Below, piece after piece: positions 51,515 to 55,905 of a stretch of 64,000 nt of DNA. Every line of letters begins with the position of its first letter. Position 1 is the first letter of the stretch. Below the pieces are notes generated by a model that ran no database searches, was not told the DNA's origin, and saw only the letters and a program-made list of their open reading frames with translations. The stretch lies in the sequence record MT939492.1. The stretch is one strand, 5' to 3'. The position numbers and the translations under genes were made by a program.

Positions 51515-53083
51515 ATGTCGATGTCACATGAAGCACTGACCCTGCGCGCAAGCCTGATCCGTCTGCAAACCGTGATTGGCCTGATGCTCGAAACTGGCGC
51601 TACGGTCACCGAAGAGCACATGCAGGAACTTACCAAGTACATGGGCGAAGTTGGCTTCGTCAATGAAACCTGCCTGTGGGAGCGCGCGATTGCTCTGCTC
51701 AATACCGGGGTGTACGTCGGTAATACGCGTCCTGCCCCAGGCACTGAACTGGGCGACAAACTACATGCCGCAGCTGTGCGTGCCGGAGATGCTAACATTA
51801 AAGCCGTGTTTAGTATCTCCGACTCTCTCAAGAAGATTACCGGCGGTAAGGAGTACTCGCATGGCGATTTCCATCAGCACCTGCGCAGCAATGTCGAATA
51901 CCAGGCCGATCGTTTCCTGAGTGGTCATCCGGTGGAGATCCAGATTCCGCCAACGCCGGAGTGCTACAATAAGGTGACCCTGCGCAATCAGGCACTCGTC
52001 CAGTATCTGTTCGATACCATCCCCACGATCAGGAAGATCGTTGCCTACAACGACCAGATCGGTGTCTCTACCTGGTACGAGTTCCCGAGGTCGATTGTAC
52101 AGGTGCGTATCGAAAACATTGATGGCGCCAAGTTGACGTTCACGAAGACGGTTGATGAGAAGCTGGTGCCGGGAACCAGGATCAGTCTTCCGTTCGAAGA
52201 CAACTTCGAGAGCGACGAAATCCCGTACAAGAAGCTCGGGATGGAGCTGGTCCGCGATCTCCCCCTGCCACCGATCCAGGTTTTGGAGCGCGCCACTGAG
52301 CTGCTGGAATACTACCGTGACGATGCCGACAAGTACCACCCTACCAATGCAAACCTCGCCATGTGCCACGGGTTCTGGCTGACGCAGAATGAACTCGAAA
52401 CTGACTTCCGTGGCAAGTACTTCATCGAGCTCAGCCTGGATCCGGTTAGCGACGAAGTTACGCTCGTTGTCAAGGATATGGACAATGTCGAGCGCCTGAC
52501 GGCAAAAGTTCCGCATCAGTACCGTAGTGATTCCATGCACTACACCTTCAATGATCCGAAGGCGGCAGTTGAGAAGGTCAAGGATCTGCTCTCCAAGGGC
52601 TTCATCCAAGGGAGCATTCAGTGGCCCACTGCCCGTAAGCTGGCAGCTGCAATGGCTACCAACGGCGTCAGGTTGATCATCAACGCCAAGGGCGACCCGA
52701 AGTATATCTACACCCTTGACCTGAACGAAGACACCGGCTTTGTTCTGCTGAAGATCGAAGACTTGGCAGGCAACGTGCTGCACGCCGCTCCCGTCATGGA
52801 TCTGATGCACTTGGGCTCCCGTAACTGGGAAACGCCAGTGAAGGAGATGGCACTGGAACTCATCAACAGTGCTGGACAATGTTCCTTTGCTGACTGCCAG
52901 GCGGTGGAGAATGAACTGGCGAAGAAGTTCACCACCGAATACCTTGACCACAAGCTCAAGGGCTTCAAGATGGTGGGAGTACAGGCGTTCAAGTACGCCA
53001 ACACCGGTAGGCCGTTCTTCATGGTCACCGTGACCGCAGACGCTTTGGAACAGCCCACCCTGTTCCCGGTCTACATGGACTAA
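51515..53083 (+). CDS. Hypothetical protein with internal repeat
   Basis: 522 aa, AAGGAG RBS; KYFIELSLDPVSDEVTLVVKD and KYIYTLDLNEDTGFVLLKIED repeats. Confidence 0.75.
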   Translation: MSMSHEALTLRASLIRLQTVIGLMLETGATVTEEHMQELTKYMGEVGFVNETCLWERAIALLNTGVYVGNTRPAPGTELGDKLHAAAVRAGDANIKAVFSISDSLKKITGGKEYSHGDFHQHLRSNVEYQADRFLSGHPVEIQIPPTPECYNKVTLRNQALVQYLFDTIPTIRKIVAYNDQIGVSTWYEFPRSIVQVRIENIDGAKLTFTKTVDEKLVPGTRISLPFEDNFESDEIPYKKLGMELVRDLPLPPIQVLERATELLEYYRDDADKYHPTNANLAMCHGFWLTQNELETDFRGKYFIELSLDPVSDEVTLVVKDMDNVERLTAKVPHQYRSDSMHYTFNDPKAAVEKVKDLLSKGFIQGSIQWPTARKLAAAMATNGVRLIINAKGDPKYIYTLDLNEDTGFVLLKIEDLAGNVLHAAPVMDLMHLGSRNWETPVKEMALELINSAGQCSFADCQAVENELAKKFTTEYLDHKLKGFKMVGVQAFKYANTGRPFFMVTVTADALEQPTLFPVYMD

Positions 53084-53141
53084 GCGGACATACTCCCCCT
53101 CCCGGTTGGGAGGGGGAGCTATGCCTGATGCTTTTTTTTTT

Positions 53142-53672
53142 CTACTTGCCGCCTTTTCCGCCGGAGGCTTCGCGTGCTGCGGCTTCGGCTGCCGCCTGCA
53201 ACTTACTCTGCCGCTCCAACCAATCAGCATTGCTCTTGAACATAATCTCCGTCTCGCGACGAGTGAGCAGCAAGAACTCGCTCCACGACACCCCGTATCG
53301 ATCCTTGATACCGTTGATCATGTAACGATACATCTTGTGTTCCAACGGTCCATACGACCCGTACTGCTCTTTCGGATGCATGGCAACAGCAGCCATCGGG
53401 CGCATGTCGCGCCCTTCACCTTGCTCGTCAAAACGAGAGTCGTGATGGAAGATGCCATAGAAGTCGTCGTACTCTTCCATGCACATCAACTGGACCGACA
53501 TTGAATCAACTTCACTCCTGACCGTAGCCAGGAGATGGTTGTGTGGTCCGTACTCATCAGTCTTGTCCAACCCGAAACGATCAAAGACTACATGACCGTT
53601 CGGGTCGGCTTGTTCAAGGTCTACATCACAGAGGCGGAAATCGCCTTCGCTGTGCGCTGGCCGAGGAGCGTG
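53142..53672 (-). CDS. Conserved small ORF, probable -1 frameshift extension of upstream chaperone-like gene
   Basis: Frame is open from 53735; only candidate start is an RBS-less TTG at 53570; C-terminal YGVSWSEFLLLTRRE resembles gpT/gp51-type tail chaperone tails. Confidence 0.6.
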   Translation of the reverse strand, partial: HAPRPAHSEGDFRLCDVDLEQADPNGHVVFDRFGLDKTDEYGPHNHLLATVRSEVDSMSVQLMCMEEYDDFYGIFHHDSRFDEQGEGRDMRPMAAVAMHPKEQYGSYGPLEHKMYRYMINGIKDRYGVSWSEFLLLTRRETEIMFKSNADWLERQSKLQAAAEAAAREASGGKGGK

Positions 53673-55354
53673 AAAAAAAGTCGTGTCACGTCGAGCGGCA
53701 GCAGGCGCGGATGCTTGGAGCCAGCCACGGTCTGCTCAGCGCCGCAGACACGGCACTCGTAACGCGGAATGGCGACCATCGCAACGGTCACCGAGTCGAT
53801 GAACTTCTGCACGCCTTCGACGAAGCTTTCCACCACGTCCTGACGGCTGGAGATTTCACCCAGCAGCTCCACGAACGATTCACGCACGTCATCGACGTCG
53901 TCCACTTCCGGATCGTAGGTCAGCACACCCGGCACCGCTTCTTCGGTGTTCTTGAAGATGATGCGCTTGACCCAGTGGCTGTACTGGCGAGCAGTGGCCA
54001 TGCGGGACTGAGCGAGGATGTACTGGTCACGCTCCTGGCCGTCCAGGGACGTACCGAAGGCCGCGTCCACGCGCTCTTCGATGGAGTTGATCCAGTCGAA
54101 GGACGACTTCTCGTACAGCTCCACCGTCGGAACGGCGAACTCCACGTACACGTCGTCGGTGATGGCGCACAGCACCGTGCTGGCGTAGGCATGGCCGTTG
54201 ACGTACTCGGCCAGCTCGGCGTCGTTGGTCTTCTGGGTACGGCGAGCCATCAGGCGGCGCTGGTTCTGGCTCAGGGCGCGTCGGTTGACGAACATCAGAC
54301 GCGAGAGGTTCAGCACTTCTTCTTCGATGTGCTGGCACTCGTTGGCGTGGTTGGTGCACGGACGCGCCAGCGGGTAGCCGTTCGGGTTGTTGATCAGACC
54401 CAGCTGCAGCATCAGCAGCGGGATATCGGTGATCAGCATCTTCTGCTTGACCACGGCCGGGCTGATGTCCTTCAGCGTGCTGTCGTACATCTTGCTGATG
54501 GCGAAGTTCACCACCGTCAGCTGATGGTAGACGTTGTTGGCCGAGAAGGCCAAGCCGCCGGAGACGCGGCCCAGGGTGATCTTGCTGTTGCCCAGCTGCT
54601 GTTCCAGTTCCAGCATCTCGCCTTCACCGGGCGCCTGCAGGGACACCCAGAAGCCGGAGTGCCACATCGGAGCCTGCGCCAGCGAACCCACGCCCAGGCG
54701 CGCCTTCAGGCGGCTCTTGGCTTCTTCACCGGAGACACGGCCGTTGGTGCTGGAGTTGCCGCCGGTAGCCACCGGGCGGCCGATCATCATTTCTTCGCCG
54801 TTGTAGTCGACCGTCTGCTGCCAGTCGGAACCTTCGACACCCAGAGCACGCTGACCGTAGTTGCCAGTGGGCATCAGGCGCGAACCACGCGCAGCACCTT
54901 CCAGCCAGCGGATGACTTCCGGAGTGGCGGTGAGGTTGAGGTTGTTCAGGCTTTCGCCGACCGGCGCGAACTCTTCAGCGGTCTGGTTCAGGGTCCACAG
55001 ATGGAAACCCTTCGTCACGTCCTGCTTCTCGGCTTCGGTGGTCAGCGGCCGGGTCAGCGGCCGGGTCAGGGTGACGGTCTTGCTCGGTTCGGTCGGCTCG
55101 GAGCGCTTGAGGTGCACACGACGCGAGGCGTCGGCGGCCAGCGTACGTTCACGCTTGGCGATGGGGCTTTCACCACCAACCTCGGCAGCCACCTGCTCGA
55201 TATCGGTGTACGGATCCTGAACCAGCGTTTCGACCGGCGTACCGTTGGTGTTGACGAACTCACGCGGATCATCGGCTACCTGAACCGGCGTCGCTTCGAC
55301 CGGGGTTTCAGCCGGCGGGGTTTCCTGGATGTTCTCGTTGGGATCCTGCGTCAC
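53621..55354 (-). CDS. Conserved tail/baseplate assembly chaperone-like protein (T4 gp26-like, tentative)
   Basis: 577 aa; Cys pairs (PCTN...ECQH; YECRVCG), acidic disordered N-terminus, GGAG RBS. Confidence 0.6.
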   Translation of the reverse strand: MTQDPNENIQETPPAETPVEATPVQVADDPREFVNTNGTPVETLVQDPYTDIEQVAAEVGGESPIAKRERTLAADASRRVHLKRSEPTEPSKTVTLTRPLTRPLTTEAEKQDVTKGFHLWTLNQTAEEFAPVGESLNNLNLTATPEVIRWLEGAARGSRLMPTGNYGQRALGVEGSDWQQTVDYNGEEMMIGRPVATGGNSSTNGRVSGEEAKSRLKARLGVGSLAQAPMWHSGFWVSLQAPGEGEMLELEQQLGNSKITLGRVSGGLAFSANNVYHQLTVVNFAISKMYDSTLKDISPAVVKQKMLITDIPLLMLQLGLINNPNGYPLARPCTNHANECQHIEEEVLNLSRLMFVNRRALSQNQRRLMARRTQKTNDAELAEYVNGHAYASTVLCAITDDVYVEFAVPTVELYEKSSFDWINSIEERVDAAFGTSLDGQERDQYILAQSRMATARQYSHWVKRIIFKNTEEAVPGVLTYDPEVDDVDDVRESFVELLGEISSRQDVVESFVEGVQKFIDSVTVAMVAIPRYECRVCGAEQTVAGSKHPRLLPLDVTRLFFTLLGQRTAKAISASVM

Positions 55355-55905
55355 TGCTCGTTCTCCTGATGCGAGGTTTCTTCGATCGGAGCTGCGACGG
55401 CCTCTTCGGCAGCCTTGTCGGCCTTCAGCTCTTCACGGGTTTCCTGGTCGTAGTAGCCCAGCGTCTGCACGATGTTGGGCATCACGATGCGGGTATGGCG
55501 ACCCTGCCAGTCGGCGTACTTCTCGGCGATATCGATGACCTGCATGGTCTCATCGCCAGTCATGCGCGGCTTGCTGGTCTTGCGCACGCGCGCGGTGACG
55601 GTGTTGGAGAACTCGACGTGGCCCTTGCGGATGCCATCGAGTTCGGTACGGAAGGTGCGGCTGTCCTGGCTGACGACCTGCGCCACCTTGACCAGCTCGG
55701 TCCGGTCTTCGACAGGAACCTGTTCCAGAGCTTCCTTGCTGCGCAGGATGTTCGAAACCGGCAGCACCTGCGCCAGCTGCTGTGCGCAGCCGGAGTAGAC
55801 GTCTTCCAGTTCACGCAGCGACTGCGCAGTCAGGTCACGGTCCCTGCCCGCCTTGTAGGGCTTGCGTGCGTTGGTGTTCTTGCGATTCTTGTTGCTAACG
55901 GGCAT
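55351..55905 (-). CDS. Conserved hypothetical protein
   Basis: ATG 55905 with GGAG upstream; helical; 4-nt overlap with next gene. Confidence 0.7.
   Translation of the reverse strand: MPVSNKNRKNTNARKPYKAGRDRDLTAQSLRELEDVYSGCAQQLAQVLPVSNILRSKEALEQVPVEDRTELVKVAQVVSQDSRTFRTELDGIRKGHVEFSNTVTARVRKTSKPRMTGDETMQVIDIAEKYADWQGRHTRIVMPNIVQTLGYYDQETREELKADKAAEEAVAAPIEETSHQENEQ

What the first reader, a model, noticed from the sequence alone, without database searches (positions are those of the whole stretch)
53142..53735. Candidate -1 programmed frameshift fusing two tail/baseplate chaperone-like ORFs (G/GT-type)
Seen: on the minus strand the 577-aa ORF reads CGA CTT TTT TTC ACG near its end. That is a run of seven T (plus-strand A7 at 53673-53679) forming a T_TTT_TTC slippery heptamer, using CTT/TTT codons that look rare in this GC-rich gene. 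The -1 frame is open from 53735 to 53142. The downstream ORF's only start is an RBS-less TTG, and the frame upstream of it still reads protein-like (DLEQADPNGHVVFDRFG). A hairpin (53627-53654) lies 17 nt 3' of the site, farther than the usual 5-9 nt. Established: lambda G/GT and P2 E/E' tail chaperones use this design, P2 on a T-run. Inference: the phage makes a 577-aa protein and a ~737-aa fusion. I do not recall this being described for nucleus-forming jumbo phages.
Basis: partly seen in the sequence, partly recalled or inferred. Interest (0 to 1): 0.75.

Follow-up and report, generated by a model that had tools for sequence, protein, structure and literature searches.

The report
Conserved frameshift in jumbo-phage core gene
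A run of T's near the end of a 577-residue gene of Xanthomonas phage Xoo-sp14 is very probably a programmed -1 frameshift site that adds about 176 residues of the "next gene" to a minority of the protein, and the same unannotated arrangement is present in every phiKZ-like (nucleus-forming) jumbo phage examined, including phiKZ.

Summary
The window is Xanthomonas phage Xoo-sp14 (100% identity). The T7 run, the T_TTT_TTC heptamer in the frame of gene A (53621-55354, minus) and the open -1 frame (53735-53142) are all there.

Comparative evidence is strong. I examined 19 isolate phages from distinct genera, 8 metagenomic representatives, 2 close relatives, phiKZ and Churi. In every one the downstream ORF (B) lies in the -1 frame of A. 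That frame is open across a T5-T8 run sitting on an almost invariant Phe-Phe of A. 23 of 27 lineages have a canonical T_TTT_TTN heptamer.

B homology runs upstream of every plausible start, and in some phages into A itself. Annotated B starts disagree between records (ATG, GTG, TTG, CTG). None of 150 family representatives is an in-frame A-B fusion.

Published phiKZ Grad-seq data detect the B region at about 2% of A. It sediments in heavy fractions, not as a free small protein.

A is Chimalliviridae core gene cg18 (phiKZ gp077). It is non-virion, with a confident predicted fold that matches no PDB entry and is only remotely like T4 gp26-type baseplate-hub assembly proteins. It works like lambda G/GT but is not a member of that family. 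I found no prior description. The fusion protein itself has not been shown directly.

The parts
53621..55354 (-). Gene A (Xoosp14_234), 577 aa, zero frame. It corresponds to phiKZ gp077, PhiPA3 gp074, Goslar gp081 and Chimalliviridae core gene cg18.
   Evidence: ORF and translation. Annotation. phrog_4585 at E 7e-98, matched to the family's C-terminus. Core-gene table of PMC10299810. 1,295 representative clusters.
53672..53678 (-). Slippery heptamer T_TTT_TTC in A's frame, part of the T7 run 53673-53679. It covers the two Phe codons F560 and F561.
   Evidence: Sequence. F560 is invariant and F561 near-invariant in 95 homologues. The homologous position is xxT TTT TTN in 23 of 27 lineages. TTT is a rare codon here.
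53142..53678 (-). -1 frame reading from the heptamer to its stop (178 codons). The first ~64 residues are predicted disordered, followed by a ~110-residue helical domain. This is the proposed C-terminal extension of the fusion.
   Evidence: Open frame. The PHROG 12109 profile matches from profile position 4 at a residue encoded near 53615, upstream of every start codon. tblastn homology starts from the first residues after A's stop. Length from the site is 151-178 aa in 19 phages. AF2 model.
53621..53678 (-). Dual-coding overlap: A's last 17 codons plus stop in frame 0, and a Pro/Ser/Gly-rich linker in frame -1.
   Evidence: It lies within the longest perfectly conserved run of the A-B locus among three related genomes (53704-53631, 74 nt).
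53142..53501 (-). Gene B as annotated in GenBank (Xoosp14_233, 119 aa). It is most likely only the 3' two-thirds of the -1-frame coding region.
   Evidence: Annotation. Homology extends 59 codons upstream of this ATG. The AGGAG upstream is not conserved in L015/L016.
53627..53654 (-). Its role is doubtful.
   Evidence: MFE structure. z = -0.7. One pair is broken in L015. Not conserved in other phages.
53566..53608 (-). Predicted long imperfect hairpin HP2, downstream of A's stop, in the part read only in the -1 frame. It includes the TTG at 53570. Role unknown.
   Evidence: MFE and centroid structure. The 112-nt segment folds at -41.7 kcal/mol with z = -2.7.
55351..55905 (-). Upstream gene of the same operon (Xoosp14_235, the phiKZ gp078 position). 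Its stop overlaps A's start. The trio small gene-A-B is syntenic in all phages examined.

Best explanation
Gene A and 'gene B' are one recoded gene. Most ribosomes read A to its stop and make the 577-aa protein. A minority slip back one base while the two Phe codons of T_TTT_TTC occupy the P and A sites. Both Phe-tRNAs can re-pair with TTT. These ribosomes continue in the -1 frame for 176 more codons. The product is about 737 aa and consists of A residues 1-561, a ~60-residue disordered linker and a ~110-residue helical domain. In this product A's own C-terminal helix is replaced.

B is probably never made on its own, or only marginally. The arrangement sets a fixed low ratio of long to short form, a few per cent if the phiKZ data are representative.

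Shown: the sequence anatomy, its conservation, the homology of the -1 frame upstream of any start, and translation and heavy sedimentation of the B region in phiKZ.

Inferred: the slip itself, its ribosomal nature, its efficiency, and the function. For function, my best guess is a non-virion assembly factor, possibly for the baseplate hub, whose long form tethers a second partner, as in lambda G/GT.
For: (1) In 19 isolate phages of different genera, 8 metagenomic representatives, 2 close relatives, phiKZ and Churi, B is always in the -1 frame of A and that frame is open across the T-run. The distance from the site to A's stop varies from 36 to 114 nt, and the locus GC content from 36 to 59%.
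(2) Codons at the site are xxT TTT TTN in 23 of 27 lineages. The first Phe codon is always TTT. The preceding codon ends in T whatever amino acid it encodes: Leu, Ile, Thr, Val, Tyr or Gly.
(3) In at least 7 genomes a -1-frame stop lies 2-4 codons before the run, so the shift window is bounded to the run and the following 36-114 nt.
(4) B homology starts upstream of every ATG/GTG/TTG. The PHROG profile matches from position 4 and tblastn from query residue 1. In FBKp24, MJ359, SPN3US, Machina and JM-2012 the N-terminal part of B lies inside A. Annotated starts differ in codon and position: 20-87 codons after the site, as ATG, GTG, TTG or CTG.
(5) None of the top 150 of 1,295 representative clusters carries a C-terminal extension, so in-frame fusions are avoided.
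(6) TTT is 10% of Phe codons in this 58% GC window. This is the only T|TTT|TTC among 35 Phe-Phe pairs. It is also the only homopolymer heptamer whose -1 frame outruns the 0-frame stop.
(7) phiKZ Grad-seq (PMC10914614, Suppl. Table 1): PHIKZ076.4, the annotated 80-aa tail of B, is detected at log10 iBAQ 9.08 against 10.7 for PHIKZ077, about 2.4%. It peaks in fractions 4-6 with 0 and 0.05 in fractions 1-2, where the authors place monomers and small complexes. PHIKZ077 peaks in fractions 3 and 5. The mRNA levels of the two are alike.
(8) The longest perfectly conserved stretch of the locus among Xoo-sp14 and two relatives (74 nt) covers the site.
Against: No peptide, footprint or protein band shows the fusion directly. 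The Grad-seq result would also fit a small B bound to a large complex.

No conserved stimulatory structure or upstream SD-like element was found. HP1 is 17 nt away and no better than shuffles.

Four lineages lack a canonical heptamer. Noxifer, PS119XW and PhiPA3 have G or A at the first position. In L025 the T6 run is displaced by one base relative to A's frame.

The Phe-Phe motif is conserved as protein too, so part of the T-run conservation may reflect protein constraint.

Xoo-sp14 has an in-frame ATG (53501) with an AGGAG 13 nt upstream, so some independent B cannot be excluded.

The lineages share ancestry, so the count of 'all in -1' is not a set of independent trials.
Confidence: 0.8

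Rival explanations
1. Same fusion protein, but made by transcriptional slippage. The RNA polymerase (phage nvRNAP or host) adds one extra U on the T-run in a fraction of transcripts. That puts the downstream sequence into the frame of A's upstream part.
For: The common denominator across lineages is a T-run (T5-T8) rather than a strictly phased heptamer. In L025 the run is shifted by one base relative to A's frame, which matters less for polymerase slippage. T is also preferred at the last heptamer position in 11 of 19 isolates, which lengthens the run.
Against: Several lineages have only T5-T6: Noxifer, PS119XW, PhiPA3, YongXC32 and L025. From general knowledge of bacterial RNAPs, that is short for appreciable slippage. 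The run is phase-locked as xxT TTT TTN in 23 of 27 lineages. There are no data on slippage by the jumbo-phage polymerases.
Confidence: 0.12
2. No recoding. B is an independent small protein started at ATG 53501, at TTG 53570, or at a non-canonical codon after A's stop (coupling or re-initiation). On this view the open -1 overlap is incidental.
For: GenBank annotates a separate 119-aa gene. There is an AGGAG 13 nt before ATG 53501. The B region could reach heavy gradient fractions by binding A or another complex.
Against: The conserved N-terminal part of B lies upstream of these starts, and in five phages inside A. No start codon is shared between phages. The AGGAG is lost in the closest relatives while the reading frame is kept. 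The frame relation and the open overlap are kept in all lineages, including 36-40% GC genomes where 87 stop-free codons upstream of the annotated start (PA7/phiKZ) are unlikely by chance.
Confidence: 0.06
3. Artefact: a homopolymer sequencing error or a recently broken gene in this one genome.
For: Homopolymer runs are error-prone in sequencing.
Against: A's zero-frame C-terminus after the run matches the family profile to its end. The same layout is seen in all other genomes, which come from many laboratories and platforms. The T7 is identical in phiKZ, PA7 and Churi, while a 1-nt length difference between them lies in the intergenic A-run.
Confidence: 0.01

Closest known systems
Lambda G/GT tail assembly chaperone frameshift (and the conserved tail-chaperone frameshifts of long-tailed phages)
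   Same: It is a -1 slip near the 3' end of the upstream ORF. The downstream ORF has no start of its own and is expressed only as a C-terminal extension. Short and long forms occur in a fixed low ratio. Neither product is in the virion. No strong downstream RNA structure is needed. The points about lambda are from established knowledge, not tested here.
   Different: It is not located between tail tube and tape measure genes. A is 577 aa, not about 140. There is no sequence-family match and no fold match. The slip is on Phe codons in a T-run. The binding partners are unknown.
P2 E/E' (contractile-tail counterpart of G/GT)
   Same: It is a -1 shift on a T-run in a myovirus, giving an extended product, as the finding states. 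This is from memory and was not tested here.
   Different: Same differences as for G/GT: different gene context, size and family.
T7 gene 10A/10B capsid frameshift
   Same: It is a low-efficiency -1 slip on Phe codons close to the stop, adding a C-terminal extension to a minority of molecules. This is from established knowledge and was not tested here.
   Different: The T7 product is a virion capsid protein with a short extension. Here the protein is non-virion and the extension is a linker plus a folded domain of about 176 aa.
T4 gp26-type baseplate hub assembly proteins (Pfam T4_baseplate)
   Same: The predicted structure of A gives Foldseek hits with probability 0.93-1.0 and E from 1.5e-4 to 3e-2 to about eight BFVD proteins named baseplate hub assembly protein or chaperone. 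TM normalised to the target is 0.41-0.52. Three GenBank records label A or a neighbour 'baseplate hub'. Like a chaperone, A is absent from the virion inventories.
   Different: There is no sequence-level match in Pfam, PHROGs or NCBIfam. A is 2-3 times larger and carries four invariant Cys. The names in BFVD are automatic. T4 gp26 is reported (from memory) to give a second product by internal initiation, not by frameshifting.

Membership tests
Programmed -1 ribosomal frameshift cassette | X_XXY_YYZ heptamer in the zero frame allowing both tRNAs to re-pair | tested here: met
   T_TTT_TTC at 53678-53672 in A's frame. The homologous site is canonical in 23 of 27 lineages.
Programmed -1 ribosomal frameshift cassette | -1 frame open across the site and extending beyond the zero-frame stop into a conserved coding region | tested here: met
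   Open from 53735 to 53142. There are 178 codons from the site. The same holds in all relatives.
Programmed -1 ribosomal frameshift cassette | Site and frame relation conserved among orthologues beyond what protein coding requires | tested here: met
   The wobble T of the preceding codon is kept across six different amino acids. The rare TTT codon is used in a 58% GC genome.
Programmed -1 ribosomal frameshift cassette | Stimulatory element (hairpin or pseudoknot 5-9 nt downstream, or upstream SD-like sequence) | tested here: not met
   HP1 is 17 nt away with z = -0.7. There is no shared hairpin in 15 phages folded, no SD-like motif upstream, and no Rfam hit. This feature is not obligatory for phage chaperone-type sites.
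Programmed -1 ribosomal frameshift cassette | Trans-frame protein detected | not testable with these tools
   Only indirect evidence: in phiKZ the B region is detected at about 2.4% of A and sediments in fractions 4-6.
G/GT-type tail assembly chaperone | Gene pair lies between the tail tube/major tail gene and the tape measure gene | tested here: not met
   The neighbours are a gp078-like small gene, gp079-like, nvRNAP beta and a RAD2/SF2 helicase.
G/GT-type tail assembly chaperone | Sequence or fold membership in a tail assembly chaperone family | tested here: not met
   No Pfam, PHROG-named or NCBIfam hit. No PDB match by sequence or fold. Only noise-level BFVD hits to chaperones, E > 2.
G/GT-type tail assembly chaperone | Two products sharing an N-terminus, the longer made by a -1 shift near the 3' end | tested here: inconclusive
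   The sequence design is met (see the rows above). The products were not observed.
T4 gp26-like baseplate hub assembly protein | Match to the family profile (Pfam T4_baseplate) | tested here: not met
   No hit at E <= 1 in 13 orthologues.
T4 gp26-like baseplate hub assembly protein | Shared fold | tested here: inconclusive
   Foldseek against BFVD gives E from 1.5e-4 to 3e-2 and TM (target) 0.41-0.52 for several proteins so named. No solved structure is available to compare with.
Chimalliviridae core gene cg18 (phiKZ gp077 family, phrog_4585/8054) | Profile match over the full length and conserved synteny | tested here: met
   phrog_4585 at E 7e-98. 218 phage records. Core-gene table. Synteny.

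The most novel reading that the evidence does not exclude
The long form is the only way the B domain is ever made, in every nucleus-forming jumbo phage. The A : A-B ratio set by the slip is then an essential, family-wide control of an assembly or other core step. Alternatively, the extra base is put in by the phages' own multisubunit RNA polymerase, which would be the first programmed recoding assigned to such an enzyme.
Probability: 0.15. Interest if true: 0.75.

Novelty: new member of a known kind. Interest (0 to 1): 0.62.

Why it matters
If real, one of the 72 conserved core genes of the nucleus-forming jumbo phages (cg18) has an unrecognised second product, and about 200 deposited genomes, phiKZ included, annotate its 3' part wrongly. 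They record it as an orphan small ORF with arbitrary starts: 80 aa in phiKZ, 119 aa here, and CTG starts in RSL2 and Ea35-70. This explains why B is missing from core-gene lists. It also adds a conserved helical domain to a protein of unknown function and gives a handle on that function: two forms in a fixed ratio, non-virion, possibly hub assembly. Finally, it extends the G/GT design principle to a different gene and a different phage family. It is a new instance of a known mechanism, not a new mechanism.

Tried and rejected
- Downstream stimulatory hairpin: folded in Xoo-sp14 and 14 other phages. There is no consistent structure or z-score. Rfam gives nothing.
- Function by sequence: Pfam, PHROGs and NCBIfam give no named family at E up to 1, on 13 orthologues. 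A PDB profile search finds nothing.
- Function by fold: no PDB match for A. B matches only its own orthologues.
- The search for related loci with the 13-sequence alignment failed because no stretch was conserved enough. I used annotated phage records and the look-up of encoding contigs instead.
- I suspected that a 1-nt length difference between PA7 and phiKZ lay in the slip run. It lies in the intergenic A-run after B.
- Literature: seven searches and six papers read for 'frameshift' together with phiKZ, SPN3US, 201phi2-1, Chimalliviridae, gp077 or PRFect. No prior description was found. The library is open-access only, so older subscription papers on 201phi2-1 and phiKZ were not checked.
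- The sequencing-error and chance explanations were rejected on the comparative data.
Full report
IDENTITY AND ANATOMY

The window matches Xanthomonas phage Xoo-sp14 (MT939492.1, 232 kb, host X. oryzae pv. oryzae) at 100% identity. On the minus strand three genes form a unit that ends at a GC-rich hairpin:
- a small gene, Xoosp14_235 (55351-55905);
- gene A, Xoosp14_234 (53621-55354, 577 aa);
- an annotated 119-aa gene B, Xoosp14_233 (53142-53501).

Near A's end the sequence reads CGA CTT TTT TTC ACG. The T7 run is at 53679-53673, and the heptamer T_TTT_TTC (53678-53672) is in A's frame. A stops 51 nt later (53623-53621). The -1 frame is open from 53735 to 53142. The minor errors are these:
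- The first -1-frame start is TTG 53570, but in-frame ATGs follow at 53501, 53486 and 53480.
- CTT is not a rare codon; only TTT is (69 TTT against 597 TTC).

IS IT MORE THAN CHANCE IN THIS GENOME?

The window is 57.8% GC. Of 35 Phe-Phe dipeptides in its long ORFs, 29 are TTC TTC and only this one is T|TTT|TTC. Among all in-frame A- or T-homopolymer heptamers in long ORFs of the window, only this one has a -1 frame that continues past the zero-frame stop, by 479 nt.

THE DOWNSTREAM FRAME IS CODING UPSTREAM OF ANY START

The -1 frame translated from 53735 matches PHROG 12109 from profile position 4. The match begins at a residue encoded near 53615, just after A's stop, well upstream of TTG 53570 and ATG 53501. 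The annotated 119-aa protein matches only from profile position 41. tblastn of this frame finds phage homologues aligned from the first query residues. A's own zero-frame C-terminus matches PHROG 4585 to within a few positions of the profile end. A therefore really ends where it does, and a homopolymer sequencing error is excluded.

I fetched the locus from:
- 18 further isolate phages of different genera: Noxifer, PS119XW, LucasX, Eowyn, pEa_SNUABM_54, DT01, PhiPA3, PA7, RSL2, Goslar, SPN3US, Ea35-70, JM-2012, Yong XC32, Proteus phage 10, FBKp24, MJ359 and Machina;
- phiKZ and Churi;
- three close IMG/VR relatives;
- eight divergent metagenomic representatives.

The results:
- In every locus B is in the -1 frame of A, and that frame is open into A, past a T-run on the Phe-Phe motif.
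- The A-frame codons there are xxT TTT TTN in 23 of 27 distinct lineages.
- The first Phe codon is always TTT.
- The preceding codon ends in T although it encodes Leu, Ile, Thr, Val, Tyr or Gly.
- The exceptions are Noxifer, PS119XW and PhiPA3 (G or A at the first heptamer position, T5-T6) and metagenomic L025, where a T6 run is displaced by one base.
- In at least seven genomes a -1-frame stop lies 2-4 codons before the run. The shift window is therefore bounded by that stop and A's stop, which is 36-114 nt downstream.
- The -1 frame from the site to its stop is 151-178 codons in all 19 isolates.
- The annotated B starts lie 20-87 codons after the site and use ATG, GTG, TTG or CTG, with no shared position.
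- In FBKp24, MJ359, SPN3US, Machina and JM-2012 the N-terminal part of B lies inside the overlap with A, so re-initiation after A's stop cannot reach it.
- These genomes span 36-59% GC. In AT-rich phiKZ/PA7, 87 stop-free codons precede the annotated ATG.

In a 95-sequence alignment of A, the first Phe is one of nine invariant columns and the second is nearly invariant. An exhaustive search found 1,295 representative clusters of A. None of the best 150 has a C-terminal extension, so natural in-frame A-B fusions appear to be avoided. That is what one expects if both forms are needed.

CLOSE RELATIVES

Among Xoo-sp14 and two IMG/VR genomes (83-88% protein identity), the longest perfectly conserved stretch of the whole A-B locus is 53704-53631 (74 nt). 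It covers the site and the 41 nt after it. Other parts of A are also highly conserved, so this is modest support. The AGGAG that precedes ATG 53501 in Xoo-sp14 is replaced in both relatives by in-frame coding changes. That argues against a conserved ribosome-binding site for an independent B.

RNA STRUCTURE

However, the 72-nt segment folds no better than shuffles (z = -0.7), and a substitution in L015 breaks one of its pairs. A stronger hairpin (53608-53566) lies after A's stop; the 112-nt segment has z = -2.7. Folding the 70 nt after the site in 15 phages shows no shared structure or spacing. Rfam gives no hit. I conclude that the site works, if it works, mainly through the slippery run.

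INDEPENDENT PUBLISHED DATA

In phiKZ, A is PHIKZ077 and the last 80 codons of the -1 frame are annotated as PHIKZ076.4. In the Grad-seq data set of Gerovac et al. 2024 (PMC10914614, Suppl. Table 1):
- PHIKZ076.4 is detected by mass spectrometry at log10 iBAQ 9.08, against 10.7 for PHIKZ077. That is about 2.4% on a molar scale.
- Its normalised profile is 0, 0.05, 0.25, 1, 0.9, 0.95, 0.55 in fractions 1-7. This is where the phage RNA polymerases run.
- The authors state that most phage proteins, monomers or complexes under 100 kDa, are in fractions 1-3.
- PHIKZ077 peaks in fractions 3 and 5.
- The two genes have equally low mRNA levels in the first 10 min.

A 9-kDa free protein would not sediment in fractions 4-6. 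A B region that is part of a fusion of about 79 kDa inside a complex, made at a few per cent of A, fits the data. A small B bound to a complex would fit as well, so this is supportive and not decisive.

WHAT THE PROTEINS ARE

A corresponds to phiKZ gp077, PhiPA3 gp074, 201phi2-1 gp136, Goslar gp081 and RAY gp267. It is core gene cg18 of the Chimalliviridae and is listed as hypothetical.

It is not among the 40 proteins of the phiKZ virion atlas or the 28 of the Goslar structure. Its Churi homologue is listed among non-structural proteins present 15 min after infection.

There is no Pfam, named PHROG or NCBIfam family and no PDB sequence match.

AlphaFold2 with 95 sequences gives a confident model (pLDDT 85, pTM 0.81). 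Four invariant Cys (C333, C340, C534, C537) suggest a metal site. The last helix (556-576) starts at the Phe-Phe, so the fusion would lose it.

Foldseek finds no PDB fold (best E 1.3). Against predicted viral structures it finds the orthologues and, more remotely, about eight proteins named T4-like baseplate hub assembly protein or chaperone. These have E from 1.5e-4 to 3e-2 and TM normalised to the target of 0.41-0.52. This is a lead, not a membership.

The -1-frame product is predicted to be disordered for about 64 residues and then helical (pLDDT 70-90). It matches only its own orthologues.

MECHANISM AND RIVALS

The best-supported explanation is a -1 ribosomal slip with Phe-tRNAs on T_TTT_TTC, giving A (577 aa) and a minority A-plus-extension product of about 737 aa.

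Transcriptional slippage on the T-run would give the same protein. It is favoured only by the out-of-phase run of L025. It is disfavoured by the T5-T6 runs of several lineages and by the phase-locking elsewhere.

Independent initiation of B and artefact are poorly compatible with the data.

By design the system works like lambda G/GT, P2 E/E' and T7 10A/10B (established knowledge). It fails the membership tests for G/GT on gene context, family and fold.

NOVELTY

None of the GenBank records examined annotates a joined CDS. Literature searches found no description. The search covers open-access papers only. I rate this a new member of a known kind: a family-wide, unannotated recoding event in a core gene of nucleus-forming jumbo phages.

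Noticed in passing
window 53093-53118 (hairpin) and 53132-53141 (A10 on minus / T10 on plus): A perfect 11-bp GC-rich hairpin with a 4-nt loop lies between the convergent genes B (minus) and 51515-53083 (plus), next to a 10-base homopolymer. It is probably a terminator shared by both directions. phiKZ has an analogous hairpin after B.
   Followed up: partly
window 9627, 33983, 44373 (plus strand): Three T7 runs are each preceded by the same CTTA, giving CTTATTTTTTT. This could be a recurring terminator tail or a regulatory motif of this phage.
   Followed up: no
window 53566-53608 (minus): A strong predicted hairpin lies in the part read only in the -1 frame. It overlaps the conserved N-terminal motif of B and the TTG at 53570, and it is nearly invariant in two relatives. 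Its role is unknown.
   Followed up: partly
L027 (phiKZ NC_004629.1 71442-71684), L011 (RSL2), L014 (Ea35-70), L006, L010: B is annotated very differently between records. It is 80 aa in phiKZ and PA7, 75 aa in pEa_SNUABM_54 and 45 aa in Churi, and it has CTG starts in RSL2 and Ea35-70. In Churi the small ORF on the opposite strand next to B is labelled 'baseplate hub protein'.
   Followed up: partly
gene A, residues C333, C340, C534, C537 (window 53621-55354, minus): Four Cys are invariant in 95 homologues, in two pairs 200 residues apart. This suggests a structural metal site in a fold that has no PDB match.
   Followed up: no
protein P0033: A 4,564-residue database protein matches A in 42 separate stretches. 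It may be a mis-assembly or an odd repeat protein.
   Followed up: no
L012 (Goslar), L024, L032, L033: A Macro-domain gene follows B directly in Goslar and in several metagenomic relatives, but not in Xoo-sp14.
   Followed up: no
window 61417 (C10), 18102 (T9), 63991 (T10): Further long homopolymer runs occur in a 58% GC genome. None of them lies in a layout like the one studied.
   Followed up: partly
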